From the IMG/VR virus record IMGVR_UViG_3300050821_002957, positions 310,001 through 374,000 of that record: a stretch of DNA of 64,000 nucleotides. One strand, 5' to 3'. The notes below the pieces were generated by a model. That model was not told where the DNA came from. It ran no database searches and saw only the letters and a list, made by a program, of their open reading frames with translations. This document shows positions 4,091-47,640 of this stretch, piece after piece (within the stretch, counting starts at the first letter, position 1; every line of letters begins with the position of its first letter). The position numbers and the translations under genes were made by a program.

Positions 4091-4120
4091 ACGCTATCAC
4101 AGTAGATACATCGTTGTCAA
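4091..4120 (-). promoter_or_regulatory. Sigma70-type promoter, leaderless, with TAGATACATC box in spacer
   Basis: TTGACA-N18-TAGCGT, ATG 7 nt downstream. Confidence 0.6.
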
Positions 4121-4308
4121 TTCTGGGTAGATGTCATGGAGATTCGCTGTGGCTTGAATCGCCAACAATGACGCCATGCAAAATGAGCCATACCAGCATG
4201 ACCACACCGAGCACATTTCGTTCTCCAATGCTTTCCTGAGACCCCACGAATAACCCACCAGAGATCGTGATACCAGCGATGTACCGAAACTTTATGTGGT
4301 TCGCTCAT
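4117..4308 (-). CDS. Hypothetical small protein (CxxC)
   Basis: ORF in co-oriented gene run. Confidence 0.5.
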   Translation of the reverse strand: MSEPHKVSVHRWYHDLWWVIRGVSGKHWRTKCARCGHAGMAHFAWRHCWRFKPQRISMTSTQN

Positions 4309-4392
4309 TGTAATCCTAAAGCCTTTCTCATTGCGAATTGTGTTTGCAAGACGCCAGCCTCTTCGCCAACCTCTAATGCATTGGTGAGTAAA

Positions 4393-4725
4393 TCAATGAG
4401 CGTATTTCTGTTGATACATCCACTCAACCAAATCTTGTCGTTGAGTGATTTCTGGATACATCCACTCAACCAAAGCAAGAGCCGATGCTACAGTTCTAAG
4501 CTCGACATCAGTCATCAACAGGCGATACCCATTCAACCGTTTCCCACTTTCAAGATCCATCACCAGATATTGCATTTTGGATGCTAACGATATACCCGGC
4601 TCTTCCCGGTCCAGATTTTCTATCCACGGTTTATCGTCTTTAGTCGTGTTGAAAATGATGTCACCTGCCAACCGAAGAATATCAGCCATCTGGTTTTTCA
4701 CATGTGCCGAAACTGCATGTAACAT
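4393..4725 (-). CDS. Hypothetical protein
   Basis: ATG 4725 directly follows the stop of an upstream small ORF. Confidence 0.55.
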   Translation of the reverse strand: MLHAVSAHVKNQMADILRLAGDIIFNTTKDDKPWIENLDREEPGISLASKMQYLVMDLESGKRLNGYRLLMTDVELRTVASALALVEWMYPEITQRQDLVEWMYQQKYAH

Positions 4726-4726
4726 C

Positions 4727-4891
4727 CTAATTTTCCTCGTTATTAAAAATTTGAATTGCCGTAGCGTACTTACGGAACGACAATGAACCACAAGACGAAA
4801 ATCGCATCGAGACGGTAGCAATCTGTTCAGGACCCTCTTCGAGGAAATTATCCAGATCGGACATTGACGTAAAATCGATCATGAAAGTCAT
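4727..4891 (-). CDS. Hypothetical 54-aa protein (MTFMIDFTSMSDLDNFLEEG...)
   Basis: Read by hand; ATGA overlap with upstream stop; below ORF-track cutoff. Confidence 0.5.
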   Translation of the reverse strand: MTFMIDFTSMSDLDNFLEEGPEQIATVSMRFSSCGSLSFRKYATAIQIFNNEEN

Positions 4892-5111
4892 CCCTTGATC
4901 CATTTCTTCAGCAACGAATCCGGCAGCGGTTTTTCACCACGAAGCTGCTGTAAATACTGGACGAACACTCCGTCAACCGCCTTGGCATTATTCACATCAG
5001 GAATCTTCAATTCCTTTTTTGCATGAAGGCGAGAAAATGATAAATCCCCTGAAGTTGACCAAACTCACCGTTCGTCATTTCAATGGTCTTCAAAGTCTTG
5101 GTCCGTGGCAT
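4888..5111 (-). pseudogene. Small gene broken by a 1-nt frameshift at an A6 run (or sequencing error)
   Basis: MPRTKTLK...FMQK then KELKIPDVNN...KWIKG* in the -1 frame; both ends overlap neighbouring stop/start codons. Confidence 0.5.
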
Positions 5112-5377
5112 CACGCCTCTGCTTTCAGGGCCTTCTCTAAGCGTTCAATCACCGCTTCCTCTTTAGAGGCATGTTTTCCGATGAGCGCACCATGTTTGAT
5201 GCCGAGCAGACAGGTTTCGACGATGCTGACATGCCGACGCTTGGCCGATTGGGAAGACGATTTCTTGCTGAGAACTTCGACGGCATTCGCAGCATGAATA
5301 TCAGCAAGATAAACGGCGAGATTTTTCCAATTGTCCAATTCGATCTTCAGATCTAGAATCTCGTTCTCAGTCATCAT
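5111..5377 (-). CDS. Hypothetical protein
   Basis: ORF in co-oriented gene run. Confidence 0.6.
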   Translation of the reverse strand: MMTENEILDLKIELDNWKNLAVYLADIHAANAVEVLSKKSSSQSAKRRHVSIVETCLLGIKHGALIGKHASKEEAVIERLEKALKAEA

Positions 5378-5379
5378 GA

Positions 5380-5679
5380 TTATGCTCCGATCTCGATGGT
5401 GGGCATTTCCATTCCGGCAGCAAAGCCATGCCGAGTATAAAATGACTTGATAGGGATCATTGCCGTTTTAAAGGACTTTTCAGTACCGTCACCGTTCTGA
5501 ATGAAATGCATCAGCTTTTTCGCAGATCGAATGGGAGCATTCCAATACGCCCAACCATCACTGCAAAGATTGACTTGATCACGAAAATCGGAGAGGAATT
5601 TAGCCGCTTGATAAGTGGGTGTGTCTGGACGATATTTACGAACAGCACTATCGATTTCGTTTTCATTCATGTAGTTCAT
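5380..5679 (-). CDS. Hypothetical protein (early)
   Basis: Directly behind a strong sigma70-type promoter. Confidence 0.7.
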   Translation of the reverse strand: MNYMNENEIDSAVRKYRPDTPTYQAAKFLSDFRDQVNLCSDGWAYWNAPIRSAKKLMHFIQNGDGTEKSFKTAMIPIKSFYTRHGFAAGMEMPTIEIGA

Positions 5680-5685
5680 AAGAAG

Positions 5686-5729
5686 ATTCTATCAAATGGA
5701 TGGTGTCATGTCAAGAGAAGATGTATCTT
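5686..5729 (-). promoter_or_regulatory. Sigma70-type leaderless promoter with upstream AAGATGTATCTT box
   Basis: TTGACA-N17-TAGAAT, ATG 6 nt downstream. Confidence 0.75.
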
Positions 5730-5880
5730 TTTTTAGAAACGCCAAAAATGAACTGGAATTGGCGTTTCGGCAATGAAAGTTTCGACTGCATTTTTAACAG
5801 CAAGAAGTGTTTCTTGGTCATGTGGCTCTGGAGAAAGCCAGTATTCACGAATGATTTCACGTATCAGGTTTCATAGTACC

Positions 5881-5921
5881 ATATTACCAGAACCTAAATT
5901 CATTGTCAATAGATGTAACTA
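5881..5921 (-). promoter_or_regulatory. Sigma70-type leaderless promoter with TAGATGTAACTA box
   Basis: TTGACA-N17-TAATAT, ATG (5874) 6 nt downstream. Confidence 0.65.
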
Positions 5922-6227
5922 ATTTCTATGTTCGTCGAAAAACAATTTTTGACTGATTATTGGCATAAGCTTTTCAAGGGCAACAGGAGAAATTCTATCA
6001 ATGAGATCATATTCTGTGCCGACGAGAGCGCCAAATTCGACTTCATAACTCTCGTAACCGCTTAAGTATCTAATGTATACGTAATCCACCTTCGGTGACT
6101 TCGTAACTCGAAAACGAACACCATCACCCATTGAAACAGGTGTCTGAGCACCCCACATTTTAAAAATTGTATTATTACGGGGATTCGTGATGAAATCTTC
6201 AATTGAACTAGTAAACTTTGTCTTCAT
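5919..6227 (-). CDS. Hypothetical protein
   Basis: ATG 6227 preceded by AAGGA; upstream part of the track ORF looks non-coding and structured. Confidence 0.65.
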   Translation of the reverse strand: MKTKFTSSIEDFITNPRNNTIFKMWGAQTPVSMGDGVRFRVTKSPKVDYVYIRYLSGYESYEVEFGALVGTEYDLIDRISPVALEKLMPIISQKLFFDEHRN

Positions 6228-11825: not shown

Positions 11826-11883
11826 ACAGTACCATGTTTAGATGTAGATGTCAAGTTGACAGATCCAGAAAGCATGGTGAAAT
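11826..11883. promoter_or_regulatory. Back-to-back divergent sigma70-type promoters
   Basis: TGTCAAGTTGACA (11849-11861) supplies both -35 boxes; -10 TGAAAT (+) and TACTGT (-). Confidence 0.6.
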
Positions 11884-11959: not shown

Positions 11960-12628
11960 ATGACAGATACCAAAGAACTAGAAATTACGCCACCCAAAAA
12001 GGCTACGACTCACTACGTTGACAACAAGAAATTATTTGCTGCACTAGTCGAATGGCAGAAGGATTTAAAGCGAGCGCACCGGAAGAAAGAACCGAAGCCG
12101 CAACTTCCCGAATACGTCGCCGAGTGCATGATGAAGATGGCGAATCGACTTTCTCAGAAGGCCGGATTCGTGAACTATACGTATCGAGAAGACATGGTAG
12201 GCGATGCCCTCGAATCATGTCTACGTTATATTCACAATTTCAATCCTGCAAAAAGTAACAACGCCTTTGCTTACATTACGCAAATTATTCATAATGCATT
12301 TATTAGGAGAATCCAGAAAGAACAGAAGCAGCTTTACGTCAAAATGCGTATTGTAGACGATGCTGACTTCGTAGGTTCGTATGAAAGGCAGGAAGGAGAC
12401 TCGACACAGTACAACAACTCTTATGTGACTTATCTACAGGAAAATAAGGGCGACGTGATTTCCAAATTTGAAAGTTGGAAAGAGTCGAAGAAGACCAAGG
12501 CAAATGCAAAGAAGAAAGAGGCAAAGCTGCTGGCTGGATTGTTTGTCGAAGAAGAGCCAGATGCAGCGGTTGTCGTGACAGTTACACCGAAAAAGAAAAA
12601 AGCGAAGGTAGCAAAGGCAAAGAAATGA
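11960..12628 (+). CDS. gp55: Late-transcription sigma factor gp55
   Basis: HYVDNKKL, FVNYTYREDMVGDALESCLRYIHNFNP.KS.NAFAYITQI..NAFIRRIQKEQKQ. Confidence 0.96.
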   Translation: MTDTKELEITPPKKATTHYVDNKKLFAALVEWQKDLKRAHRKKEPKPQLPEYVAECMMKMANRLSQKAGFVNYTYREDMVGDALESCLRYIHNFNPAKSNNAFAYITQIIHNAFIRRIQKEQKQLYVKMRIVDDADFVGSYERQEGDSTQYNNSYVTYLQENKGDVISKFESWKESKKTKANAKKKEAKLLAGLFVEEEPDAAVVVTVTPKKKKAKVAKAKK

Positions 12629-29562: not shown

Positions 29563-29592
29563 TTAGATGCAACATTGGTGGTACGATGAGTT

Positions 29593-31101: not shown

Positions 31102-31173
31102 CAGATTTCAGTTCAGCGGTAAGCTAGTCATGTACCCCGCAAGACCCAGAAAGGTCGTGCTACATGAACTAGA

Positions 31174-32031: not shown

Positions 32032-32055
32032 ACTCTATATAGGATTCAAAATATC

Positions 32056-32949: not shown

Positions 32950-32973
32950 GTGCAATGAGGATTGGGACGATTA

Positions 32974-33948: not shown

Positions 33949-33950
33949 CA

Positions 33951-34510: not shown

Positions 34511-34511
34511 T

Positions 34512-36010: not shown

Positions 36011-36057
36011 CAGAAGTCAAGAGAAATGTTACCTTAGTCCTTAGGAGAACTCTTCTT

Positions 36058-36453
36058 ATGAGACTCACATATCGTGGTAAGGTATACAGGATCGGCTTCA
36101 AGCACGGCCAGGAAACAAACGAAATTCCAGGTCACGGTCCAACCGCTCAGGACTTCACAATTGCAACTATTCGCACTGGTGAGCGTGAGACGGACACAAA
36201 GGCAACAGCAGACGACAGCAACATTCTCGCAACGGCAAAGGTTCATAGGTTCCATCGTGACGAGCATTCGCATGAGGCAGCACGCAAGGCAGCACTCAAG
36301 GCTGCGCTGAAGTCGGTCAAGACGACTCACAACTTCCGTGAGGCAATCTGGAAGACCTATCATAGCCGTCCCGGTGGCATTTCTGCTTCACAGGTCGGCG
36401 GCGGTGGTGGTGGCGGCATTCCGACCACTGTTACGGCCAACGCAGTCAGCTAA
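36058..36453 (+). CDS. Hypothetical basic protein
   Basis: Own promoter (TTGACA 36007), AGGAG SD and terminator. Confidence 0.7.
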   Translation: MRLTYRGKVYRIGFKHGQETNEIPGHGPTAQDFTIATIRTGERETDTKATADDSNILATAKVHRFHRDEHSHEAARKAALKAALKSVKTTHNFREAIWKTYHSRPGGISASQVGGGGGGGIPTTVTANAVS

Positions 36454-36475
36454 ATCATTGACCGTCAAGCATATA

Positions 36476-36505
36476 AGGGCCAGGGAGAAATCCTTGGCCT
36501 TTTTC
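36476..36505 (+). terminator. Rho-independent terminator
   Basis: GGCCAGGG-AGAAAT-CCTTGGCC-TTTTT. Confidence 0.8.
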
Positions 36506-36515
36506 ATTTCTGCCC

Positions 36516-36545
36516 TTGACATTAGATGTATCTAAATGCTAAGAT
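36516..36545 (+). promoter_or_regulatory. Sigma70-type leaderless promoter with perfect TAGATGTATCTA box in spacer
   Basis: TTGACA-N18-TAAGAT, ATG 6 nt downstream. Confidence 0.75.
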
Positions 36546-36551
36546 TGGTTT

Positions 36552-37514
36552 ATGGAAAACGTACTTGAACAGAACATCTTCGAGGCAGAAACGTTTGAAT
36601 TTAAGCCTCTAAAGCGTACCGACATCCATCGTCCTTCGGCGATCAATCCTAGCGAATATCAATTTGTCGCTTACGAATTTCTTCCTGGTGGAGCATGGCA
36701 GTATCTTGCCGTTCAGCGAGAGATCATTCGTAACCATATGGCCCGGACGGGCGGCAACTATAGCGGACATGATCACGGCGGTAACTGCATGGTCTGCGGT
36801 AATGTTCTTGCCATCTACACCGTTCTTTTCTATCACGAAAAATCCAACACCTACGTTCGCATGGGTGATATTTGCGCTCGGAAGGTTGAAATGGCCTTCG
36901 ACAATTCGGCGTTCAACCGCTTTAAGGACACCGTGAATGGCTGGCGCAGAGCCGTGGCTGGAAAGAACAAAGCAATGAACACGCTCATGGAGAAGGGCTA
37001 TGGTGATGCCTGGGATCTCTTTGAGACTCGTGAGAAAAATTGGAAGGATTACAAATACGAAGAGAACACCATCTGCGATATCGTCGGCAAGCTGGTCAGA
37101 TACGGGAACATTTCAGACAAGCAGATGAACTTCATCGGTCGTCTTTTAACTCAGATCGATGGTCGTGTCGTCATCGCCAAGAAACGTGCCGAAGAAAAGG
37201 CGTTGGCGGCTCCGGTTCCGACTGGCCGTTTCGTCATCGAAGGAAAGATCGTCTCTCGCCAGTACAAGAGCGACATCATGTACCCGGCTTTCAAGATTAC
37301 CGTGAAGCATGTTTCTGGCTGGTGTGTCTATGGCACGCTCCCGGCATCGCTCGAAGATGCTAAGGTTGGCGATTTTGTTACGTTCTCTGCCACCGTAGAA
37401 GTTTCTGACGGTGATCAAAAATTCGGTTTCTTCAGCCGTCCAGCGTGCGGTAAGATCCTCCCTGGACCCAGCGTAGATGACATTCTGACCGTGGCGTCGC
37501 AAGAGGTAGCGTAA
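36552..37514 (+). CDS. Hypothetical protein (CxxC zinc ribbon, C-terminal OB-like region)
   Basis: CMVCG...GDICA; IEGKIVS...VYGTLP...GDFVTFSATV...FGFFSRP. Confidence 0.7.
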   Translation: MENVLEQNIFEAETFEFKPLKRTDIHRPSAINPSEYQFVAYEFLPGGAWQYLAVQREIIRNHMARTGGNYSGHDHGGNCMVCGNVLAIYTVLFYHEKSNTYVRMGDICARKVEMAFDNSAFNRFKDTVNGWRRAVAGKNKAMNTLMEKGYGDAWDLFETREKNWKDYKYEENTICDIVGKLVRYGNISDKQMNFIGRLLTQIDGRVVIAKKRAEEKALAAPVPTGRFVIEGKIVSRQYKSDIMYPAFKITVKHVSGWCVYGTLPASLEDAKVGDFVTFSATVEVSDGDQKFGFFSRPACGKILPGPSVDDILTVASQEVA

Positions 37515-37531
37515 TACCTCTTGCGTTTTTT
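37499..37531 (+). terminator. Rho-independent terminator overlapping the next promoter
   Basis: GCAAGAGGTA-GCGTAA-TACCTCTTGC-GTTTTTT; TTGCGT-N18-TACAGT promoter overlaps it. Confidence 0.8.
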
Positions 37532-37557
37532 GAGAACACCATGATACAGTAGACATC

Positions 37558-38553: not shown

Positions 38554-38923
38554 AGCCGACTGGACCCTTGTCGGTCACTTCGGAGTTGACGCTGGTCTCT
38601 GTTGGATTGGAGATCCATGTTACGTCCTTCATACTTCCGAAATGAAAGACGGAAAAGACGTACCAACACCATTACCAGAGACACTCGGAAAAGACTGGAG
38701 TGCATTCTGCAATCTACTCGATGGTTCTTATCCGACGTTGAAGAGCTTCAACTACGAGGCAGGCCATGAAGGTCTTGGGGTCTGTGTATCGACCGGCTTT
38801 GGTGACGGCACCTATCCAGTGTACGCTCTCATTCAAGAAGAGGGCACCTGGGGCAAACGAGTAGCAGCGATCTTTATTGATTTTTTTGGATTGCTGGAAG
38901 ATGGCGCTGAAGACGAAGATTGA
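38531..38923 (+). CDS. DUF4241-like protein
   Basis: GVDAG...DPCY...STGFGDGTYPVY. Confidence 0.6.
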   Translation: MKNPLANKADWTLVGHFGVDAGLCWIGDPCYVLHTSEMKDGKDVPTPLPETLGKDWSAFCNLLDGSYPTLKSFNYEAGHEGLGVCVSTGFGDGTYPVYALIQEEGTWGKRVAAIFIDFFGLLEDGAEDED

Positions 38924-38924
38924 C

Positions 38925-38954
38925 TTGACAATAGACACATCTTCCTGATAGGAT
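38925..38954 (+). promoter_or_regulatory. Sigma70-type promoter of the NAD genes with TAGACACATCTT box
   Basis: TTGACA-N18-TAGGAT, ATG 8 nt downstream. Confidence 0.7.
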
Positions 38955-38962
38955 CTAACTAA

Positions 38963-40186
38963 ATGAATCTACAAAATCCCAAATTGGTTGACAAAATCCA
39001 CAAGACACCAACGAAAGTAGTTCTTTTCGTAACAGGTGGTGGTCTGGAAATTTTCCAAACCTTGACTCATCGTGGCGGCGGCTCGGCTACGCTCCTGTCC
39101 GGGCTGATTCCGTATGACACTCAAGAGACCATCGAATTGCTTGGTGGAGTCCCAGAAAAACTGGTCAGTGAGAAAACTACACGAGAGATGGCAATGGTGG
39201 CCTTCCAGCGTGCTCTGAAGCTCTCAAAAGGCGAATACCCAGTCATAGGCGTGGCGGCGTCGGCAGTGCTTCAGAAGACGCCGTATGAGCGTGAAGGTCG
39301 AAAGCATTTTGTCTATGCTGCACTCCAGACCGACACTAAGACGGTTTCCTGTGTTCTGGACCTACATGATGGTATTGCAGAACCAAAAGACACCGGACCA
39401 ATTCCACCGGATCATGGTGTAGGATTGCGAATCATGGAAGAAATGATCACAGCCAATTTGATTCTGAATTTGATTGCCGAAGGTTGTGGACTGGAAGAAC
39501 GAATTACTCTTGGTTATGGTGTCGAAGACGATCTGACCCGGCGTGAATCGACCTTGACCGGAATTTCGATCAACAAAATCATGAGTGGTCATCCAGTTTC
39601 GTTCGACTTGGGCAAAGACACCAAAAAAATTGAAACCGCCACATTCAGTTCGACTAGTTACCGAAACATTTTCCCAGGTCGATTCAATCCGATCCATGCT
39701 GATCATTGGGAGATGTGCGCTCTCGCCTGCGAACAATTTGGTTTCGTCGAATTTGAAATCTCCATTGGCAATGTCGAAAAACCCACATTGGATTTGATTT
39801 CTCTCGAAGAGACGCTGAAGCAATTCTGCCAAGAAAGAACGCCACCATTGCCAGTTTACTTCAGAGTGTGGGTGACCAATGCTCCCACTTTTGTCCAGAA
39901 AGCCGACATGTTTCCGGGCGCAACGTTCATTGTTGGCTATGACACAGCAAAACGTATTTGCGACCCAAAGTATGCCGGAAACATCGAAGAAGTAATGGAA
40001 GTGTTCAAAAAAAATGACGTTGATTTCCTGGTGTTCGGACGTGAACTGAATGGAGTCTATAAAGCTGATGTTAGTGAATTTCCGACTTCGTTTCGACAGA
40101 TTGTTGTTACGAATACTGAGCCACGTCAGTACTCAAATATCTCTTCTTCAGAGATCCGTCGCCGCACGTCAGAAGGGCATGAATGA
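38963..40186 (+). CDS. CinA/PncC-like domain fused to a NadD-type (NMN/NaMN) adenylyltransferase domain
   Basis: N: VTGGG...GGSATLL...PY...VSEKTTREMA; C: FPGRFNPIHADH, F.VGYDTA.R, ISSSEIR. Confidence 0.78.
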   Translation: MNLQNPKLVDKIHKTPTKVVLFVTGGGLEIFQTLTHRGGGSATLLSGLIPYDTQETIELLGGVPEKLVSEKTTREMAMVAFQRALKLSKGEYPVIGVAASAVLQKTPYEREGRKHFVYAALQTDTKTVSCVLDLHDGIAEPKDTGPIPPDHGVGLRIMEEMITANLILNLIAEGCGLEERITLGYGVEDDLTRRESTLTGISINKIMSGHPVSFDLGKDTKKIETATFSSTSYRNIFPGRFNPIHADHWEMCALACEQFGFVEFEISIGNVEKPTLDLISLEETLKQFCQERTPPLPVYFRVWVTNAPTFVQKADMFPGATFIVGYDTAKRICDPKYAGNIEEVMEVFKKNDVDFLVFGRELNGVYKADVSEFPTSFRQIVVTNTEPRQYSNISSSEIRRRTSEGHE

Positions 40187-40352
40187 GCTAAAGGCTTTGA
40201 TGTACGTCTACCGAAAGGAATGGAAAGCCTGTCGGTTAAAAGTTAAGGCAACAAATCGGCAAATGGTTTTGCTGAAGCATAAGTTGAGAAAAGAAATGTT
40301 CAGACAGAAAAGAATTCAGAATAGAATGGAGAGAAGACAAAATGCCAGCTAA
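40179..40352 (+). CDS. Small basic protein
   Basis: Overlaps both neighbours. Confidence 0.5.
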   Translation: MNELKALMYVYRKEWKACRLKVKATNRQMVLLKHKLRKEMFRQKRIQNRMERRQNAS

Positions 40353-41877
40353 CACAGCATGGAGAATGCAAAACGGACTTGATGGCTTCAAGTATCCTCG
40401 TGGTTCGAGTGAGCGCATGATGCCGAAGCGCACGGACGGCTACAAACCTTCGCACTGGATGTTCGAGGAAGACGGCGTGACCGAGTGTTATGACTACCTC
40501 ACCAGCCGTGGCGGTATGTTTCAAGACCTGACGATGTTTGGAGCACAGTCCATCGTCATGAAGTACTTCTTGGGATGTGTCGTAACCCCGGAACAAGTTC
40601 GACGTGCTCGCAAATTTTATAAGAGTTATTACGGCATGGACGGCGTGTTCAACTACGAAGCGTGGATGGACATTGCGACTCGTCTCGAAGGTCGCTTGCC
40701 TCTAGAATTCTGGGCGCTGCCTGAAGGCATGAGCGGCATTCCAGTTCAGACGCCGATGATGGCCTACGTCAACACCGATCCGAAGCACGCCCATCTGTCT
40801 GGCTACGTCGAGCCGCTGACGTTCAAGGTGTGGAATACAATCACCGTGGCGTCGTTGTCACAGCACATCAAGAAAATCATCTATCAGTTCCTCGTCGAGA
40901 CCGGCACGCCCGAAGACATCATTTGGAAGCTGCATGACTTCGGTTACCGTGGTGTTTCGAGCGAAGAGTCCGCTGAATTTGCTGGGGCCGCACACCTTCT
41001 GAATTTCTGGGGCAGCGACACCATTCCGGCTATCGATCACATCAACGAATTTTACTCGGATGGTGTGTTCGACGAAGATGGTGACCCTACCTACATGCCT
41101 GCCTTCAGCGTCCGTGCCACAGAGCACAGCATCATGACGCAGAATGGCCGCAATGGTGAGTCGGCCATCGTTAAGCGTATCCTTCAAAAGTGCCCGAATG
41201 GGATCATCGCAATGGTCGGCGATAGCTACAACATCTTCGACTTCTCCAGCAAGATCATCGGAACTGAATTCCACACCGAAGTGATCGAGCGTGAAGGTAT
41301 TGTTGTGATTCGCCCGGACAGCGGTGAACCGATTCCGACGATGATGAAAGTGATGTGGGAACTCGGCGAAAAATTCGGCAAGACGGTCAATGACAAGGGC
41401 TACTACAATCTCGGCACAGGCAAGGGTCTGGGCAAGATCAAGGTGCTTCAGGGCGACAAGAACGACTACGATGCTGTCTATAACATGCTCCGTGCCTTCA
41501 AGGGCGCTCAGTGGTCGGCGGATAACATTGCAGCCTTCGGCATGGGTGGCGCACTGTTGCAGGCCAGCACTCGTGATACTCAGAAGATGGCCGTCAAGCT
41601 CTCTTCGCAGACTCGTAATGGCGTCTGGGAAGATATCTTCAAAGATCCGATCACCGATCCTGGCAAGGGTTCCAAGTATGGTCGCTTCGCTGTGACATAC
41701 GAAGAGAATGCTGGTGTACGTCGTATGGTGACCAGTCGTCTGACTCAGAATGGTTCGATTCCGAATGGCAATCTGATGCGGATGATTTCTCGCAACGGTT
41801 ACCTCGCCGTCCATGACAAATTTGAAACGGCTCGTGCTCGTGCGGATGAGTGGATGCCGAAATCCAAAGCAGCTTAA
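40342..41877 (+). CDS. nadV: Nicotinamide phosphoribosyltransferase (NAMPT/NadV family)
   Basis: TDGYKPSH, LHDFGYRGVSS, AAHLLNF.GSDT, ATEHS, VIRPDSG, LQGD, FGMGGALLQ, KDPITDPGK.SK.GR. Confidence 0.93.
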   Translation: MPANTAWRMQNGLDGFKYPRGSSERMMPKRTDGYKPSHWMFEEDGVTECYDYLTSRGGMFQDLTMFGAQSIVMKYFLGCVVTPEQVRRARKFYKSYYGMDGVFNYEAWMDIATRLEGRLPLEFWALPEGMSGIPVQTPMMAYVNTDPKHAHLSGYVEPLTFKVWNTITVASLSQHIKKIIYQFLVETGTPEDIIWKLHDFGYRGVSSEESAEFAGAAHLLNFWGSDTIPAIDHINEFYSDGVFDEDGDPTYMPAFSVRATEHSIMTQNGRNGESAIVKRILQKCPNGIIAMVGDSYNIFDFSSKIIGTEFHTEVIEREGIVVIRPDSGEPIPTMMKVMWELGEKFGKTVNDKGYYNLGTGKGLGKIKVLQGDKNDYDAVYNMLRAFKGAQWSADNIAAFGMGGALLQASTRDTQKMAVKLSSQTRNGVWEDIFKDPITDPGKGSKYGRFAVTYEENAGVRRMVTSRLTQNGSIPNGNLMRMISRNGYLAVHDKFETARARADEWMPKSKAA

Positions 41878-41886
41878 GGAAAACCA

Positions 41887-43086
41887 ATGAGCCATTTTAC
41901 TGTAATGGTTGCGGGAGAAGATGTCGATGTCCTTCTCGCACCCTACCATGAATTTGAATGTACTGGGGAAGATAATCAGTACGTCCAAGACATCGACCAG
42001 ACCGAAGAAGCTCGACAAGAATACGCCGACCACAAAGAAACGGTTGTTCGTCATCTGGCTTCTGGTAAGTTGGTCAAGAAGTTTACGAAAGAAGGCGAAT
42101 ACAAAAAGATGTTCGTCCGTGAACCTACACCAGAAGAATTGGCTCAAATTGGACGCTTTGGTGGCAGCGGCTCCTTGAGCAATGGCCTCAGTTATTATTC
42201 AAAAGATTGGGGTGATGGGTTAGGTTATCGTGCAAAGATCATCATCGTTCCCGAAGGCTACGAAGAAGTCGAAGTGCCTTGTTCTGAAGTGATGACGTTC
42301 GCCGAATTTATCGAGTATTGGTACGGGCGCAAGACGGTGCCTGAAGGCCGGGAACCAAATTTGAAGCGGCAACACAAGTACGGCTATGCGGTCGTAAATG
42401 AAGATGGTGAGGTCATTAAAGTCATTGACCGCACCAATCCCAACAAGAAGTGGGACGGCTATCAAATCGGTGGACGCTGGAACGGTTTCTTCAAGCTGAA
42501 GGAAAACAAAATTGGCATCATCGGTGAACCCGGCTTGCAGTCAATCAGCGAAAACTATAAACCACCTGCTTCAAATCGAGCCGACATCGCACGTAAAGGT
42601 GACATTGATTTCGACGGAATGAAATTTGAATCAGCGACACGAGCAGCACAGAAGTACGATCTGTTTACGTCGATCACCAAAGCTCTTCCGTTGGCGCTTA
42701 CATGGCCCTTGATGTTGGAAAAACACAAGACCGGCGTCGATGCCAAGGGTGAACCTACATACAACTACAGTGTGGCCCGAGACGAATACGGTGCCCAACC
42801 GATGGTTCAGGCGCTTCGTAATCACAAAGACGACGATGTTCGCTGGTGGGATTTGGAAGATTTCATGATGACTCGTCAAGAGTACATCGACCTCAGCGCA
42901 AAACAATCTATCATGACTTACGCCCTTGTCATCGGTGACCAGTGGATTGCTCGTGGACGCATGGGTTGGTTCGGCGTCTCCCTCGACGAGAAAGACGAAT
43001 ACAAAGTTTGGGTAGATCGCTTTCACGAAGCTCTAAACGCATTGCCCGACGATACGCTGTTGACAATTGTGGATTGTCACATATGA
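41887..43086 (+). CDS. Conserved phage hypothetical protein (paralog 1)
   Basis: MSHFTVMV...LAPY...NPNKKWDGYQIGGRW...G.MGWFG...VDCHI. Confidence 0.8.
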   Translation: MSHFTVMVAGEDVDVLLAPYHEFECTGEDNQYVQDIDQTEEARQEYADHKETVVRHLASGKLVKKFTKEGEYKKMFVREPTPEELAQIGRFGGSGSLSNGLSYYSKDWGDGLGYRAKIIIVPEGYEEVEVPCSEVMTFAEFIEYWYGRKTVPEGREPNLKRQHKYGYAVVNEDGEVIKVIDRTNPNKKWDGYQIGGRWNGFFKLKENKIGIIGEPGLQSISENYKPPASNRADIARKGDIDFDGMKFESATRAAQKYDLFTSITKALPLALTWPLMLEKHKTGVDAKGEPTYNYSVARDEYGAQPMVQALRNHKDDDVRWWDLEDFMMTRQEYIDLSAKQSIMTYALVIGDQWIARGRMGWFGVSLDEKDEYKVWVDRFHEALNALPDDTLLTIVDCHI

Positions 43087-43268
43087 GTACAGAAGAAAAC
43101 TCATCGTTGTTGGATTCTGTTGTCAACGAAACGGAGCATCCGACGTACAAACACTCAGAGCCTCCACAGACGACCAACTTATGTCGATGGGAACCATGTA
43201 CATTCATTTTGTTTGGTCTGAACGGTGAAACTCACGAAGAATACCATAAGCGGAAAGGATGTGCCTGA
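43083..43268 (+). CDS. Hypothetical protein
   Basis: Coupled ORF. Confidence 0.5.
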   Translation: MSTEENSSLLDSVVNETEHPTYKHSEPPQTTNLCRWEPCTFILFGLNGETHEEYHKRKGCA

Positions 43269-43564
43269 TGACTCGCAGCAAGTACGTACACAGTGCCGAT
43301 GAATTGCCTCCCGGCGAACATTGGGCTATTATCGAAGGATCATCGTTCACGATCCCTGGTGACGAACGCTCCCGAACGCATCCCGGCCACGGTTATCCCG
43401 AGAGCACGGAACGGTACATCACTTATGAAGCCTTTACCGACAAAACGGAATTTGAGACAGAATTGAAGGCTCGTCTCCGTAGCAAAGGTCAATACAGAAC
43501 AGTCCGGGGAATTCACGTTCAAGTCTACGAAGCAACAACCGAAATTCATCTCAAGGAAAAGTGA
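43259..43564 (+). CDS. Hypothetical protein
   Basis: IPGDERSRTHPGHGYP motif; coupled. Confidence 0.6.
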   Translation: MCLMTRSKYVHSADELPPGEHWAIIEGSSFTIPGDERSRTHPGHGYPESTERYITYEAFTDKTEFETELKARLRSKGQYRTVRGIHVQVYEATTEIHLKEK

Positions 43565-43791
43565 TGCCATTACGACTTCTAATCATCGATGCCAAATGTT
43601 CGGACATGTGCAGCTACGCATTGTCTGTCAACGGTAACGTATTGAAAAATGGAGAGGGTTATGTGCCTTCTCTGATGCCCAACAAAGGCGGCGATTATGT
43701 CAATCTTGCTATTGACATTGACAGTGGGAAGATTTTAAACTGGAAGGTGCCAACAGAGGCAGAACTAGAAAAATTCATCGACGAGATCTAA
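43561..43791 (+). CDS. Hypothetical protein
   Basis: GYVP..MP...GDY..L.IDIDSGKILNWK. Confidence 0.6.
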   Translation: MMPLRLLIIDAKCSDMCSYALSVNGNVLKNGEGYVPSLMPNKGGDYVNLAIDIDSGKILNWKVPTEAELEKFIDEI

Positions 43792-43792
43792 C

Positions 43793-44794
43793 ATGCCTAA
43801 CGGACTACAGATTTTTGGTGGGCGTGCAAACCCCAAATTGACGAATGACATCTGCATTGCGATGGAGCACAAGAACGGTCAGCGAGAGATCAAACAATTT
43901 GCAGATGGAGAAATCTGGATGCAATACACGGACAACATTCGTGGTTCTGATGTCTTCATTGTCCAGCCGACCTGTGCTCCGGTGAACGACAATTTGATGG
44001 AATTGATGCTGATGATCAATGCTGCAAAGTTGGCATCAGCGAAGCGAGTCCAGGTGGTGCTGCCATACTTCGGTTATGCCCGTCAGGATCGCAAGGATCG
44101 CCCCAGAACGCCACTGTCGGCCAAAGTGGTGGCATCCATGCTTGGTTCGCAACGCATCAAGCGTGTACTAACGATGGATTTGCATAGCGCACCAATCCAA
44201 GGATTCTTTGACATTCCTGTTGATCACTTGTATGCTCTACCAGTCTTCATCGACTACATCAAACAAAATTTTGAACTGAGTAATTTGACCATCGTCTCAC
44301 CGGATGCTGGTGGTACGACGAGAGCACGGATGTTGGCAATGAAGCTCGGCCTGCCGCTGGCGATCTTGGATAAGTTTCGTGAAGCTGCCAATGTTGCCGA
44401 AGTTATGAACATCATTGGCGATGTCAAAGGTCGAAATTGTCTCATGATTGATGACATGATCGACACGGCAGGCACGTTGGTCAAGGGTGCAAAAGCTCTA
44501 ATGAATATGGGTGGCGCTCGCAGTGTCGATGCAATAGCAACTCATGGTATCCTTTCCTACGACAAAAAAGAAGACATCTCTGCCCTCGACAAAATTGAAA
44601 ATTCGGTCATCCGAACTGTCACGGTGACGGACACAATTCCACAAGAAGAAAACCTGGGTCGCATCTTACGCAACAATCAGGGTGACGCAATTAGAACCAC
44701 GAAGAAGCTGAAGGTTCTCTCAGTTGCTCCGTTGTTCGCCAAGGCAATCCAAGCTGTCCATAATAACGATTCGGTGAGTGGCCTTTTCGTATGA
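43793..44794 (+). CDS. prs: Ribose-phosphate pyrophosphokinase (PRPP synthetase)
   Basis: FADGE, PYFGYARQDRK, MDLH, VSPDAGG, DDMIDTAGTL. Confidence 0.95.
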   Translation: MPNGLQIFGGRANPKLTNDICIAMEHKNGQREIKQFADGEIWMQYTDNIRGSDVFIVQPTCAPVNDNLMELMLMINAAKLASAKRVQVVLPYFGYARQDRKDRPRTPLSAKVVASMLGSQRIKRVLTMDLHSAPIQGFFDIPVDHLYALPVFIDYIKQNFELSNLTIVSPDAGGTTRARMLAMKLGLPLAILDKFREAANVAEVMNIIGDVKGRNCLMIDDMIDTAGTLVKGAKALMNMGGARSVDAIATHGILSYDKKEDISALDKIENSVIRTVTVTDTIPQEENLGRILRNNQGDAIRTTKKLKVLSVAPLFAKAIQAVHNNDSVSGLFV

Positions 44795-44919
44795 TGATTC
44801 ATGTTCCTGATGAATTGCTTCGAGAGTTGGGATTGGACCCAGAATGTTGGGATGAATGCCAGGAAGAAGTAGTTTCAATTTTAGAAGATGTAGCCGAAGA
44901 AGAATCTGAAGACTTTTAA
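44791..44919 (+). CDS. Small highly acidic protein (42 aa)
   Basis: ATGA-coupled to prs; MMIHVPDELLRELGLDPECWDECQEE... Confidence 0.5.
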   Translation: MMIHVPDELLRELGLDPECWDECQEEVVSILEDVAEEESEDF

Positions 44920-44922
44920 TTT

Positions 44923-45627
44923 ATGAGCCATTTTACCGTACTCGTTATTACTCCCAACGGTACGGAGCAGGAAGCCGAAGCTCTGCTTGCTCCATACTGT
45001 GAACACACCGAAGTAGAACCTTACCAGACTCAGTGTTGGTGTGTCGGCATCAATGCTAGGAAATCAGTTCGAGAAGCTGTCACCCTCGAAATGCCCATTG
45101 AAAAGGCCAGAGATGAATTCTTGGCCCGAGAAGATGTCTGCAATCTGATCGAAGAATCCAAAAAGGCCGGAAATTATGGATTTTCTGAAGAAGTAGATAG
45201 GTTATGGGACGAGCGATTTGACAAACCTTTTGAACTTCGAGAAAAGGAATTGCTTGCTGCTCGGCCTGATCGTGATGCAGCAGATCCGACTTGCGATGAA
45301 TGCAAAGGCACCGGCATCGAGACGACAACGTACAATCCTCGGTCAAAATGGGATTGGTACGAACTTGGTGGTCGTTGGTGGGACCTGCTTGCGGTTTTTC
45401 AAGGTGAACCTGTTTCCAAATTTCTAGAAGCCAAAGGTGAAGACGATCAACCGTTCCGCACCTTTGCGATCATTACTCCTGACGGACAGTGGCTCGAAGC
45501 TGGTAAATTGCTTTGTTTCGCTGTTGTCGCCGAAGAAAAAGATCCTAGAGAATGGGAAGCCTGCTATAACGAAACACTAGACAAATATCGAGACCATAGG
45601 GCATTGTTTTACGATTGCCATATTTGA
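44923..45627 (+). CDS. Conserved phage hypothetical protein (paralog 2)
   Basis: MSHFTVLV...LAPY...YNPRSKWDWYELGGRW...YDCHI. Confidence 0.8.
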   Translation: MSHFTVLVITPNGTEQEAEALLAPYCEHTEVEPYQTQCWCVGINARKSVREAVTLEMPIEKARDEFLAREDVCNLIEESKKAGNYGFSEEVDRLWDERFDKPFELREKELLAARPDRDAADPTCDECKGTGIETTTYNPRSKWDWYELGGRWWDLLAVFQGEPVSKFLEAKGEDDQPFRTFAIITPDGQWLEAGKLLCFAVVAEEKDPREWEACYNETLDKYRDHRALFYDCHI

Positions 45628-45648
45628 ACACTGTGCTATGATACTCGT

Positions 45649-46719
45649 ATGTCCGTCGAAAACGACAAAACGGGTCTTCTGGATCGGGATTCATTTCGTA
45701 ATGGGGTGTTTCTGCGTGACGGGTACAAGTGTGTAATCTGTGGTGCCTCTGGCGTGCGTTTAGACGCTCACCACATCATCGAAAGACGCCTATGGGATGA
45801 TGGTGGCTATTATCTGGACAATGGCGCTACGCTCTGCGATGAGGGTCTTGCTCATCACATGCGTGCGGAGGAAACAGTTCTTACTTGTGACCAGATCCGC
45901 ACTGCCGCAAACATCAAACGAGTAATCATTCCTGACCATCTGTACAACGACTATAATTACGATAAATGGGGCAATATTCTCAACCCGGACGGCAGTCGCA
46001 CCAAAGGCGAACTGTTCAACGACGAATCGGTCCAGAAGGTTCTAAAAGCTGGCGGCGTCCTTGATCAATTTCGAGCATATGTTAAATATCCTCGGACATA
46101 TCATCTTCCTTGGTCACCCGGTCTGACTGACGATGATCGAATGTTGCCCTCGACCAAAATATTTGAAGGTCGTGAAGTTGTCGTTACTGAGAAGATGGAC
46201 GGCGAGAATACGACGCTCTATCGTGACTACATGCACGCTCGGTCTCTTGAAGAAGAGCATCATGAAAGTCGGGGATGGGTGAAAAAACTTCATGCCGAAA
46301 TCTGTTGGAACATTCCTGAGGGCTGGCGCATCTGTGGTGAAAATTTGTATGCGCTTCATTCTGTAGGATATCAAAACCTTCTTTCTTATTTCTTAGTTTT
46401 TTCAATTTGGGATCAAAATAACATCTGCCAGTCGTGGGATGATACAGTAGAGTATGCAGCAGTGCTCGGCCTGCAAATGGTTCCGGTGATCTATCGAGGA
46501 ATTTGGGATGAACGTCTGGTAAAGTCTTTTTCGGATAGCATTGATACTAAAAAGCAGGAAGGTTATACCGTTCGTGTGACTGATGCCTTTGCTTATGGTT
46601 CTTTCCGAAAATCGATTGCAAAATGGGTCCGCAAAGGTCACGTCCAGACGACGCATAATTGGAAAATGAGATCGGTAGTAAAAAATGGGCTAAGTCATGA
46701 AACCAAAGTTGCAACCTAA
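45649..46719 (+). CDS. HNH domain fused to an ATP-dependent RNA ligase domain
   Basis: RDGYKCVICG...DAHHI...NGATLC; KYPRTYHLPWS, TEKMDGEN, CGENL, EGY, AKWVR. Confidence 0.85.
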   Translation: MSVENDKTGLLDRDSFRNGVFLRDGYKCVICGASGVRLDAHHIIERRLWDDGGYYLDNGATLCDEGLAHHMRAEETVLTCDQIRTAANIKRVIIPDHLYNDYNYDKWGNILNPDGSRTKGELFNDESVQKVLKAGGVLDQFRAYVKYPRTYHLPWSPGLTDDDRMLPSTKIFEGREVVVTEKMDGENTTLYRDYMHARSLEEEHHESRGWVKKLHAEICWNIPEGWRICGENLYALHSVGYQNLLSYFLVFSIWDQNNICQSWDDTVEYAAVLGLQMVPVIYRGIWDERLVKSFSDSIDTKKQEGYTVRVTDAFAYGSFRKSIAKWVRKGHVQTTHNWKMRSVVKNGLSHETKVAT

Positions 46720-47047
46720 AGGCACACCTGCTTTGAACGTAATCATGACTGAACATGCCGTCTTGCGAATGCGTGAACGGATGCCAGATGATTTTACTTT
46801 CCCAACCATTGGATCTTACGTGCGCCTGCTGACGATGCAGGACACCTATCACGATCTAAATCTAGAACTGTTACGTCTAAAAGGCGGCATTGTAATCGGA
46901 AAGTGGAATGGGTCGCATTTGGCTGTTGTCACTATGTTTTCAGAAAAAACATTTCATCGTTTTCAGAAGAGACAAAAATCCAGGTTTCAACCGCTTAACA
47001 CGACCTGTTACCTGCTCAATAACATCATTTTTCCAAAGGCAGCGTAG
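46697..47047 (+). CDS. Hypothetical protein
   Basis: TEHAVLRMRER...VVT. Confidence 0.55.
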   Translation: MKPKLQPKGTPALNVIMTEHAVLRMRERMPDDFTFPTIGSYVRLLTMQDTYHDLNLELLRLKGGIVIGKWNGSHLAVVTMFSEKTFHRFQKRQKSRFQPLNTTCYLLNNIIFPKAA

Positions 47048-47062
47048 CGATACATAGTTCAT

Positions 47063-47347
47063 GTGTCAGAACAGAAAAGTGGAATCGAGGTCAAGGTCAT
47101 TGATTGGGGCAACGATCAACGTGAAGTCGCCATTCATTTCCTGGACCTAAATCAGATGCTCACCCTGAACCCGGCAGGCGCTCGAACATTTGCATTTCGT
47201 CTGATGGAGTGCGCCGATTTTCTTGAACCACCATTCGCTGACGACTCTCAAAAATTGCTAGAAGATCCCAACGACAACTCAGAATCCGAACGTTTCTTTG
47301 GTCCCTATGAAGATGATGAGGAGGACGAAGCCGACGAAGGATATTGA
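47063..47347 (+). CDS. Hypothetical acidic protein
   Basis: GTG 6 nt after ATACATA late-like motif. Confidence 0.55.
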   Translation: MSEQKSGIEVKVIDWGNDQREVAIHFLDLNQMLTLNPAGARTFAFRLMECADFLEPPFADDSQKLLEDPNDNSESERFFGPYEDDEEDEADEGY

Positions 47348-47384
47348 CACATCTATTGACATTGAAAAATAGATGTAGTAAAGT
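47344..47384 (+). promoter_or_regulatory. Leaderless sigma70-type promoter with two TAGAT-N2-ATCTA-like boxes
   Basis: TTGACA-N17-TAAAGT; boxes at 47344 and 47370. Confidence 0.65.
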
Positions 47385-47390
47385 TGAGCT

Positions 47391-47594
47391 ATGATTCCTG
47401 TTATGGAGATGCAAAAGACCGTATCGATTACGGCGGAAGAAAAATGGAAGCAAGGCGGAATGGATCAGCAGATTCGTCTTGAAATGTTGGCGGTCATCGG
47501 TCAACCTCGTTGCTATGCCAGCGAGTCCTGGAAGAAGTTACCCCACGTCCTGAAACTCAATCTCAGTGCCCGAAAATGGACCCAAAAAAGTTGA
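47391..47594 (+). CDS. Hypothetical protein
   Basis: Directly behind promoter. Confidence 0.6.
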   Translation: MIPVMEMQKTVSITAEEKWKQGGMDQQIRLEMLAVIGQPRCYASESWKKLPHVLKLNLSARKWTQKS

Positions 47595-47640
47595 TGTAGC
47601 TACTTGACATTGGCGTCGTTCCAATGTTAAGATACATCTA
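47591..47640 (+). promoter_or_regulatory. Leaderless sigma70-type promoter with two boxes
   Basis: TTGACA-N18-TAAGAT; TTGATGTAGCTA upstream, AAGATACATCTA over the start site. Confidence 0.7.

What the first reader, a model, noticed from the sequence alone, without database searches (positions are those of the whole stretch)
4103..47640. Recurrent near-palindromic TAGAT-N2-ATCTA box at early-type promoters
A perfect TAGATGTATCTA sits at 36523, with variants at 4103, 5718, 5910, 11839, 29564, 38932, 47344, 47370, 47591 and 47629. All lie in the spacer, next to the -35, or over the start site of promoters, mostly the 17-18-nt-spacer class and including the CinA-NMNAT/NAMPT promoter. The dyad symmetry and position suggest a dimeric repressor or activator regulon. 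The AbrB-like gene (446..748) is one candidate regulator.
Basis: partly seen in the sequence, partly recalled or inferred. Interest (0 to 1): 0.62.

Follow-up and report, generated by a model that had tools for sequence, protein, structure and literature searches.

The report
Operator box on leaderless phage promoters

Summary
The box is real. Counted alone in the window it is not enriched (26 sites with up to 2 mismatches against 23.6 expected). Next to a TTGAC -35 element it is (7 against 0.18). In the whole 405,631-bp phage genome it is striking: 17 perfect copies against 0.05 expected, and 31 of 37 near-perfect copies lie inside predicted sigma-70-type promoters.

It takes three positions. 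Most often it abuts the -35 on the upstream side (-47 to -36). It also lies in the spacer, or over the -10 and start site.

Nearly all these promoters have ATG six bases after the -10, so the mRNAs should be leaderless.

Related soil phages keep the same composite promoter, and orthologous promoters keep the box while their spacers diverge.

The AbrB-like gene is a poor candidate: pI 4.05 and a borderline domain match. A better one lies outside the window, a 120-aa ribbon-helix-helix protein (genome 5637-5999). It is highly conserved and restricted to the box-bearing clade. It is absent from a 96%-complete sister genome, which lacks the box and carries a different promoter palindrome.

The most likely mechanism is repression of early promoters by occlusion. 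Binding itself was not shown. I rate this a new variant of a known kind.

The parts
36516..36554 (+). Type B promoter: -35 TTGACA 36516-36521, perfect box 36523-36534 in an 18-bp spacer, -10 TAAGAT 36540-36545, ATG 36552 six bases later (gene 36552-37514, 320 aa, no Pfam match). A terminator-like hairpin lies just upstream at 36475-36502.
38925..38965 (+). Type B promoter: -35 38925-38930, box TAGACACATCTT 38932-38943 (2 mismatches), -10 TAGGAT 38949-38954, ATG 38963 eight bases later. It drives the NMNAT-like gene 38963-40186, and NAMPT 40342-41877 follows.
47344..47393 (+). Type A promoter: box TTGACACATCTA 47344-47355 directly abutting -35 47356-47361, 17-bp spacer holding the half-box 47370-47381, -10 TAAAGT 47379-47384, ATG 47391 (67-aa ORF).
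47591..47642 (+). Promoter with two boxes: TTGATGTAGCTA 47591-47602 one base upstream of -35 47604-47609, and AAGATACATCTA 47629-47640 overlapping -10 TAAGAT 47628-47633 and running to the ATG at 47640 (110 aa, YodL-like).
4081..4120 (-). Type B promoter on the minus strand: -35 4120-4115, box 4114-4103 (2 mismatches), -10 4096-4091, ATG 4083. It drives an HD-domain gene, 3502-4083.
5677..5729 (-). Type A promoter with a 3-base gap: box 5729-5718, -35 5714-5709, -10 5691-5686, ATG 5679 (gene 5380-5679, 99 aa, 45% identical orthologue in relative G001).
5881..5921 (-). Type A promoter in tandem upstream of the previous one: box 5921-5910 (1 mismatch) abutting -35 5909-5904, -10 5886-5881. It is followed only by a 5-codon ORF.
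11839..11850 (.). Weak half-box (3 mismatches) next to TTGACA elements on both strands, upstream of the sigma-region-2 gene 11960-12628. Not counted as a member.
29564..29575 (+). Weak half-box (3 mismatches) before the GTG start at 29593. The -35 is poor. Not counted as a member.
446..748 (-). Rejected as the regulator: very acidic, borderline domain match, no box nearby.

Best explanation
The box is an operator: a binding site for a symmetric, sequence-specific DNA-binding protein encoded by this phage lineage. It is attached to about fifty host-sigma-70-type, early-class promoters that start transcription at or next to the ATG, giving leaderless mRNAs.

All three positions lie inside the RNA polymerase footprint: -47 to -36 flush against the -35, inside the spacer, and over the -10 and start site. 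They do not share one face of the helix. The simplest single mechanism is therefore occlusion: bound protein shuts these promoters off.

The best candidate binder is a 120-aa ribbon-helix-helix protein (genome 5637-5999, plus strand, outside the window). Its gene lies 3-5 kb downstream of box promoters in a same-strand early block. It would thus be made early and then turn the early promoters down, its own transcription unit included, as a feedback timer.

Shown: the motif, its positions, its conservation, the fold and distribution of the candidate protein.

Inferred: binding, the direction of regulation, the timing, and the transcription start sites.
For: Motif and position:
- Genome-wide enrichment: 17 perfect copies against 0.05 expected; 37 against 1.0 with up to 1 mismatch.
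- 31 of 37 near-perfect boxes lie in promoters.
- Box starts cluster at -47 (21 sites), at -30 to -27, and at -13 to -11.
- In 22 aligned type A promoters only the box, the -35, the TG plus -10 and the ATG are conserved; the spacer is not.

Conservation:
- The same composite promoter occurs in six other phage records that are syntenic at 40-84% protein identity.
- Orthologous promoters keep the box while the spacer diverges.
- The hairpin potential of the box is negligible, -0.2 to -1.5 kcal/mol.

Candidate protein:
- 24 of 28 family members hit Pfam RHH_1.
- JGI names members CopG/Arc/MetJ regulators.
- For the N-terminal model (pLDDT 78.6), most of the fifty best matches in an exhaustive structure search, including all of the top ten, are ribbon-helix-helix proteins (TraM, NikR, PutA, AmrZ, omega, Arc), with Z 5.4-3.7.
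- The strand residues K10 to L15 are invariant in 28 homologues.
- All 62 clusters of the family are 57-88% identical, and the longest contigs that carry them reach 58-375 kb.

Co-distribution:
- Record G006 has 10 boxes and the protein.
- The 96%-complete sister genome G007 has 1 box (chance level), no such protein and no RHH_1 match.

Other points:
- The gene lies 3.2-4.2 kb downstream of a box promoter in four genomes.
- No HTH_3, HTH_17, MerR_1 or sigma-70 region 4 match was found in the genome. The AsiA and MotA (C-terminal domain) searches also found nothing, but their control genomes gave no hit either, so they show nothing.
- Precedent: the P22 Arc repressor, also ribbon-helix-helix, reads inverted TAGA boxes as a dimer of dimers (PMC12645479). 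The box here is TAGA-N4-TCTA.
Against: - No binding data and no protein-DNA model. The dimer prediction could not be run.
- The Pfam match of the candidate itself is below the cut-off: 16.6 bits against 20.5. Structure Z-scores are modest.
- The co-distribution rests on essentially one evolutionary split. Many other genes are specific to the same clade, so it is necessary evidence, not sufficient.
- Only a handful of DNA-binding families were searched. Most of the roughly 650 genes were not scanned, so another binder may exist.
- There is no box directly in front of the candidate gene.
- The commonest position, centred at -41.5, is the classic position of class II activators.
- The central AC orientation is favoured in type A sites (15 of 22), which a perfectly symmetric reader does not explain.
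- The most divergent homologue's 6-kb contig shows only a half-box.
- The host is unknown, and no RNA data exist to confirm start sites or timing.
Confidence: 0.45

Rival explanations
1. The protein bound at the box activates rather than represses, or does both. From -41.5 it would recruit polymerase as a class II activator at type A promoters. From the spacer or start site it would repress type B and C promoters. That would give two temporal sub-classes of early genes.
For: 21 boxes start at exactly -47, so they are centred at -41.5, with an A/T-rich stretch just upstream. Type A and type B differ in spacer length: 17 bp in 29 of 36 against 18 bp in 12 of 16. They also differ in the size of the first gene: median 111 against 193 aa, p = 0.026.
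Against: Type A promoters already have a consensus TTGACA, often a TG-extended -10, and a 17-bp spacer, so they should not need activation. The gap between box and -35 varies from 0 to 6 bases, which class II activation tolerates badly. The gene-size difference is weak.
Confidence: 0.17
2. The box is part of the promoter itself: an UP-like or extended element read directly by the host polymerase (alpha C-terminal domain or sigma), perhaps after modification by the phage. No separate regulator is involved.
For: The position flush with the -35 is fixed in most copies. The sister clade has a different motif fused to its -35 at a fixed place. T4 early promoters are known to carry conserved sequence upstream of the -35 (established knowledge of T4).
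Against: The same 12-mer also occurs in the spacer and over the -10 and start site, where alpha or sigma region 4 do not read. Its dyad symmetry has no counterpart in polymerase contacts. 13 of 45 strict leaderless promoters lack it.
Confidence: 0.1
3. The box is a site for a host transcription factor, which the phage uses to couple early expression to the state of the host.
For: The host is unknown, so this cannot be excluded. Cyanophage and other phage promoters are known to carry host regulator sites (established knowledge).
Against: A scan of 185,579 species' genomes for box plus TTGAC gave 64 single scattered hits. No genome had more than one hit, and none showed the promoter architecture. 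The motif switches to a different palindrome between two sister phage clades. That fits a phage-borne reader, although different hosts would fit too.
Confidence: 0.1
4. The box is kept as shared sequence for recombination between promoter cassettes, as in the PeSL elements of T4-type phages, and has no protein reader of its own.
For: T4-type phages shuffle small early genes through conserved terminator-promoter cassettes (PMC2839356, PMC4122927). Here an identical 17-18-base stretch of box plus -35 recurs about 20 times before small ORFan genes. Some copies follow a terminator hairpin.
Against: Conservation is confined to a symmetric 12-mer and holds across genomes that differ by 20-60% in protein sequence. 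Recombination needs identity within one genome only. The box cannot form the stem-loop that defines PeSLs. Spacer and start-site copies do not fit a cassette border.
Confidence: 0.07
5. The AbrB/MazE-like protein (window 446-748) is the regulator.
For: It holds the only SpoVT/AbrB-type domain in the genome. Such domains form DNA-binding dimers in AbrB and MazE (established knowledge).
Against: pI 4.05 with 29 acidic and 4 basic residues. The domain score is borderline. No relatives were found in the viral collection. It lies downstream of a tRNA synthetase gene (which overlaps its start), apparently behind that gene's box-less promoter.
Confidence: 0.03

Closest known systems
Arc and Mnt repressors of phage P22 with their TAGA-type operator in the Pant/Pmnt region
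   Same: A phage-encoded ribbon-helix-helix protein binds as a dimer of dimers to inverted TAGA boxes (PMC12645479). From my own knowledge, the Arc operator lies between the -35 and -10 of the promoter. The box here is TAGA-N4-TCTA and also lies in or beside the core promoter. The candidate has the strand-helix-helix domain plus a helical tail.
   Different: Arc controls one promoter pair; here about fifty promoters carry the site. From my own knowledge, the TAGA boxes are one base further apart in Arc (N5). The base-reading residues differ: K, L, R here against Q, N, R in Arc. There is no detectable sequence relatedness beyond the fold. Binding is not shown here.
PeSL (promoter-early stem-loop) cassettes of T4-type phages
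   Same: These are conserved composite elements with a near-consensus sigma-70 promoter and an A/T-rich region upstream. They sit before small variable early genes of T4-like phages, often behind a terminator.
   Different: PeSLs have a stem-loop just upstream and end in a Shine-Dalgarno sequence plus start codon. Here the palindrome cannot fold, has a fixed sequence, and also occurs inside the promoter. There is also no leader.
Class II CRP/FNR-type activator sites centred at -41.5
   Same: A dyad-symmetric site centred at -41.5 and abutting the -35, in 21 promoters.
   Different: The geometry is 5-N2-5, not 5-N6-5 or 5-N4-5. The -35 is consensus. The same site is also used in the spacer and at the start site.
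Leaderless phage and bacterial mRNAs (for example lambda cI from PRM; many genes of Actinobacteria and Deinococcus-Thermus)
   Same: The start codon lies at the predicted transcription start, six bases after the -10.
   Different: Here it is a whole promoter class of a T4-like phage, whose other genes show Shine-Dalgarno-like sequences. The start sites are predicted, not mapped.

Membership tests
Operator of a ribbon-helix-helix (Arc/MetJ/CopG-type) regulator | Short inverted or tandem repeats a few bases long, about one groove apart | tested here: met
   TAGA-N4-TCTA within a 12-bp dyad. Both halves are conserved.
Operator of a ribbon-helix-helix (Arc/MetJ/CopG-type) regulator | A protein with the strand-helix-helix fold is encoded by the same genome | tested here: met
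   Genome 5637-5999. RHH_1 is hit by 24 of 28 homologues. Most of the 50 best VIA-align matches of the N-terminal model, including all of the top ten, are ribbon-helix-helix proteins, Z 5.4-3.7. The protein's own Pfam score is below the cut-off.
Operator of a ribbon-helix-helix (Arc/MetJ/CopG-type) regulator | The protein binds the site specifically | not testable with these tools
   No protein-DNA tool is available.
Operator of a ribbon-helix-helix (Arc/MetJ/CopG-type) regulator | Site and protein occur together across genomes | tested here: met
   G003, G004, G006 and L099 have both. The 96%-complete sister genome G007 has neither. This is essentially one phylogenetic contrast.
Operator of a ribbon-helix-helix (Arc/MetJ/CopG-type) regulator | Autoregulation: the regulator gene lies under its own operator | tested here: inconclusive
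   The nearest same-strand box promoter lies 3.2-4.2 kb upstream in four genomes. The extent of the transcription unit is unknown.
PeSL cassette of T4-type phages | Sigma-70-like early promoter before small variable genes | tested here: met
   most first genes are 40-200 aa and have no Pfam family.
PeSL cassette of T4-type phages | Stem-loop immediately upstream of the promoter | tested here: not met
   The box folds at -0.2 to -1.5 kcal/mol, no better than shuffles. Separate terminator hairpins occur upstream of only some copies.
PeSL cassette of T4-type phages | Shine-Dalgarno sequence and start codon at the 3' end | tested here: not met
   ATG lies 6 bases after the -10 in 38 promoter-like sites, which leaves no room for a leader.
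Class II activator site | Centre near -41.5 together with a weak -35 | tested here: not met
   The centre at -41.5 is met, but the -35 is TTGACA or TTGACT.
   The domain scores 25.2 against a cut-off of 24.7 bits. The protein has 4 basic and 29 acidic residues, pI 4.05.
Leaderless mRNA | Transcription starts at the start codon | not testable with these tools
   The geometry fits. No RNA run holds this phage.

The most novel reading that the evidence does not exclude
A clade of giant soil T4-like phages runs its early programme from about fifty leaderless promoters. Each is wired to one clade-specific ribbon-helix-helix protein through an Arc-like TAGA dyad. This gives a genome-wide feedback timer, which may stand in for the AsiA/MotA-type switch of T4. 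The sister clade carries a different promoter palindrome and no such protein, which would mean that operator-regulator pairs are exchanged wholesale between related phage lineages.
Probability: 0.3. Interest if true: 0.7.

Novelty: new variant of a known kind. Interest (0 to 1): 0.55.

Why it matters
How large T4-like phages that lack AsiA and MotA switch off early transcription is poorly known. A single short operator on roughly fifty promoters, with a named candidate protein, makes the question directly testable: one protein, one 12-bp site, simple gel-shift and reporter assays.

The leaderless design of a whole promoter class in a T4-like phage is unusual. It bears on how phages get translated in the first minutes of infection.

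The contrast with the sister clade (a different palindrome, no such protein) offers a natural experiment on how regulator and site change together.

The element also gives a compact, portable promoter-operator module from an uncultured phage.

Tried and rejected
- Motif count alone in the window: at chance. Only context and the whole genome show the signal.
- AbrB-like candidate: rejected.
- Searches of the genome for HTH_3, sigma-70 region 4, MerR_1 and HTH_17: no match.
- Searches for AsiA and the MotA C-terminal domain: no match either, but the control genomes also gave nothing, so these two blanks are weak.
- A weak sigma region 4 hit at 135 kb turned out to be an HNH homing endonuclease with an HTH.
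- Pfam scan of ten basic first-gene products: no DNA-binding family, only DUF6011 in two paralogues.
- Full-length model of the candidate: Foldseek and VIA-align matched only the C-terminal helical hairpin. The PDB sequence search gave nothing. The N-terminal domain had to be folded alone.
- Relatives sought with the single AbrB-like and DNA polymerase proteins: none found by that method.
- Literature search for the box sequences: only unrelated primer-type hits.
- Sequencing runs: two soil DNA runs and no RNA.
- T4 late motif TATAAATA: not enriched.
- Hairpin or cruciform reading of the box: rejected.
- Host-genome scan: no genome with several copies.
- Pfam scan of all small proteins through large reference lists: not attempted, to stay clear of the check on long typed calls. 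The survey of DNA-binding families is therefore incomplete.

Full report
**What the window is**

The window is bases 310001-374000 of a 405,631-bp virus record that CheckV rates complete. Its DNA occurs in soil metagenome runs.

It carries a T4-type replication set: UvsW-like helicase, an SMC/Rad50-type ATPase, family B DNA polymerase and a DnaB-type helicase. It also carries NMNAT and NAMPT. The polymerase is about 41% identical to those of T4-like cyanophages. A capsid gene of the Gp23 family lies in the homologous region of a relative. This is a very large, uncultured T4-like phage with no close relative among deposited phage genomes.

**The observation**

All eleven sites exist at the stated coordinates.

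- Counted alone, the motif is not enriched in the window: 26 sites with up to two mismatches against 23.6 expected.
- The signal appears with context. Seven boxes abut a TTGAC element, against 0.18 in shuffles.
- It is stronger still in the whole genome: 17 perfect copies against 0.05 expected, 37 with up to one mismatch against 1.0, and 102 with up to two against 28.
- All 17 perfect copies have a purine-pyrimidine centre, so the consensus is TAGAT-RY-ATCTA.

**Anatomy**

The box is part of a composite promoter.

- Type A, the commonest: an A/T-rich stretch, the box, then directly TTGAC(A/T), a 17-bp spacer, often TG, a TAnnnT -10, six bases, ATG. The box then spans -47 to -36 (21 cases at exactly that place). 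Gaps of 1-6 bases between box and -35 also occur.
- Type B: TTGACA, 0-3 bases, the box, 3-5 bases, the -10, usually with an 18-bp spacer.
- Type C: the box overlaps a TAAGAT -10 and runs to the ATG.

31 of the 37 near-perfect boxes lie in such promoters. In an alignment of 22 type A promoters only the box, the -35, the TG plus -10 and the ATG carry information. The spacer does not. These are therefore not recent copies of one another.

In the window there are seven box promoters:

- 4120 (minus strand), type B, before an HD-domain gene.
- 5714 (minus strand), type A.
- 5909 (minus strand), type A, in tandem with the previous one.
- 36516 (plus strand), type B, with the perfect box.
- 38925 (plus strand), type B, before NMNAT and NAMPT.
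- 47356 (plus strand), type A.
- 47604 (plus strand), type A plus C.

The tool's own consensus scan ranks four of them among its eight best sites in 29000-48500. It also finds a terminator-like hairpin just upstream of the 36516 promoter.

**Leaderless design**

Of 109 matches to TTGACN-N17/18-TAnnnT in the genome, 38 have ATG exactly six bases after the -10, where about 1.7 are expected. Eight more have it at seven bases and six at eight.

With a 17-bp spacer and a six-base distance, 26 of 29 such ATGs open ORFs of at least 50 codons. Orthologues in relatives begin at the same ATG.

Transcription normally starts about seven bases after the -10, so these mRNAs should begin at the start codon. 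This is inferred from geometry. No RNA data hold the phage.

32 of 45 strictly defined leaderless promoters carry a box. Several other genes in the genome are preceded by Shine-Dalgarno-like sequences.

**Conservation**

A scan of the viral collection for box plus TTGAC gave mostly chance hits in coding DNA. A subset of contigs showed the full architecture.

Five such records (G001-G005) carry 2-9 boxes each, against 0-1 for the reversed control. They show the same type A and B promoters with the ATG at the same distance. They are syntenic with this genome at roughly 40-84% protein identity.

Orthologous promoters keep the box, -35 and -10 while spacer and discriminator diverge. A 374-kb relative has seven box promoters in 20 kb. 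The element is thus under selection in a phage clade.

**What it is not**

- The box cannot form a meaningful hairpin: -0.2 to -1.5 kcal/mol, no better than shuffles. It is therefore neither the stem-loop of the PeSL cassettes described for T4-type phages nor a hairpin promoter.
- A scan of one genome for each of 185,579 bacterial and archaeal species found 64 scattered single hits and none with the promoter architecture. This gives no support to a host regulon, though the test is narrow.

**Who reads it**

- It holds the only MazE/AbrB-type domain in the genome, but the match is borderline.
- The protein is extremely acidic: pI 4.05, with 29 acidic and 4 basic residues.
- It lies downstream of a tyrosyl-tRNA synthetase gene, which overlaps its start by 25 bases and has a box-less promoter.
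- It has no detectable relatives in the viral collection.

Six-frame searches of the genome found no HTH_3, HTH_17, MerR_1 or sigma-70 region 4. Searches for AsiA and the MotA C-terminal domain were also blank, but their controls were blank too. A sigma region 2 protein, the family to which T4's late sigma gp55 belongs, lies at window 11960-12628.

One weak RHH_1 match stood out, at genome 5676-5780. The 120-aa protein reads like a textbook ribbon-helix-helix N-terminus.

- 24 of 28 homologues hit RHH_1 on their own.
- JGI names many of them CopG/Arc/MetJ regulators.
- Language-model neighbours include RHH_1, RHH_3 and NikA-like clusters.
- For the N-terminal domain model (pLDDT 78.6), most of the fifty best matches in an exhaustive structural search, including all of the top ten, are ribbon-helix-helix proteins. 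Among them are TraM, NikR, PutA bound to operator, AmrZ bound to DNA, omega and Arc. Z is 5.4-3.7, modest but remarkably uniform.
- The C-terminal half is a helical hairpin, a plausible oligomerisation module.

The family has 62 clusters, all 57-88% identical. The longest contigs that carry them reach 58-375 kb. The strand residues K10 to L15 are invariant.

**Co-distribution**

Relatives were ordered by capsid protein identity.

- G006 (166 kb, 83% capsid identity) has 10 boxes and the protein.
- G007 (224 kb, 96% complete, 69% capsid identity) has one box (chance level), no homologue, and no RHH_1 match even at E = 1.
- Instead G007 carries its own motif, GACATATA(A/G/T)GTC, fused to the -35. 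It has 29 sites with up to one mismatch, against 2 for the reversed control. These are mostly followed by a short leader with a Shine-Dalgarno sequence.

Box and protein thus appear together and are replaced together. This is one evolutionary contrast, so it is supportive rather than decisive.

In four genomes the gene lies 3.2-4.2 kb downstream of a box promoter in a same-strand block.

**Mechanism**

The three positions are centred near -41.5, -23.5 and -5.5. They are about 18 bp apart, so they lie on different faces of the helix, and all are within the polymerase footprint. A single role that fits all three is occlusion.

The precedent is P22 Arc, a ribbon-helix-helix dimer of dimers that reads inverted TAGA boxes. 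From my own knowledge, its operator lies between the -35 and -10.

I therefore propose that the 120-aa protein, made from early transcripts, binds TAGA-N4-TCTA and shuts down the leaderless early promoters.

Rivals are:

- activation from -41.5, or a dual role, hinted at by the different spacer lengths and gene sizes of types A and B;
- a polymerase-read element;
- a host factor;
- a recombination cassette.

**Verdict**

The idea of a dimeric regulator regulon is supported by inference. The named candidate is not; a better one is proposed. Compared with known systems this is a new variant: an Arc-like operator logic spread over a whole class of PeSL-like but leaderless early promoters in giant T4-like phages.

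Noticed in passing
whole genome; window examples 1906(-) to GTG 1872, 27088(+) to ATG 27124, 45615(+) to ATG 45649, 52149(-) to ATG 52115: A whole class of promoters has the start codon 6 bases after the -10: 38 of 109 promoter-like sites against about 1.7 expected. This implies leaderless mRNAs, and the design also occurs without the box.
   Followed up: partly
window 724-1872 (-), 446-748 (-), 204-446 (-): A phage-encoded tyrosyl-tRNA synthetase is followed by the very acidic MazE/AbrB-like protein and an 80-aa protein with a faint PASTA-like match. The gene set starts behind a box-less leaderless-type promoter with a GTG start.
   Followed up: partly
window 11960-12628 (+): A 222-aa protein with sigma-70 region 2 only, probably the late sigma factor of this phage (the gp55 kind). 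The T4 late motif TATAAATA is not enriched in the genome (10 against about 23 expected).
   Followed up: partly
G007 (loci L193-L204), e.g. G007 90000, 167850, 204259: The sister-clade genome has a different promoter-fused motif, TT-GACATATA(A/G/T)GTC, at 29 sites. It is usually followed by a conserved short leader with GGAGAGA before the ATG. Its reader is unknown.
   Followed up: partly
genome 997-1446 and 405111-405617; L099 6297-6728: DUF6011 genes sit directly behind perfect type A box promoters at both contig ends and in relatives. They head the block that contains the ribbon-helix-helix gene. The last 108 bases of the contig are 97% identical to 1353-1460, so there are tandem paralogous modules or an assembly break in a repeat.
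   Followed up: partly
genome 6027-6662, 73324-73911, 102238-102780: A multi-copy gene family with hits in four of five relatives. In L099 the gene after the ribbon-helix-helix gene is a GIY-YIG/NUMOD3 homing endonuclease. An HNH endonuclease with an N-terminal HTH lies at 134936-135496.
   Followed up: no
window 5881-5921 (-): A well-formed type A promoter is followed only by a 5-codon ORF. It lies about 190 bases upstream of a second box promoter for the same gene: tandem promoters, or a decayed cassette.
   Followed up: no
genome about 4990-5050 (locus L058): The sequence looks like the 3' half of a tRNA gene (T-arm GGTTCAAATCC), just upstream of the block with the ribbon-helix-helix gene. 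It was not checked with the tRNA finder. The window itself has no tRNA gene.
   Followed up: no
whole genome: Type A promoters use 17-bp spacers (29 of 36) and type B 18-bp spacers (12 of 16). The first genes behind type B are longer (median 193 against 111 aa, p = 0.026).
   Followed up: partly
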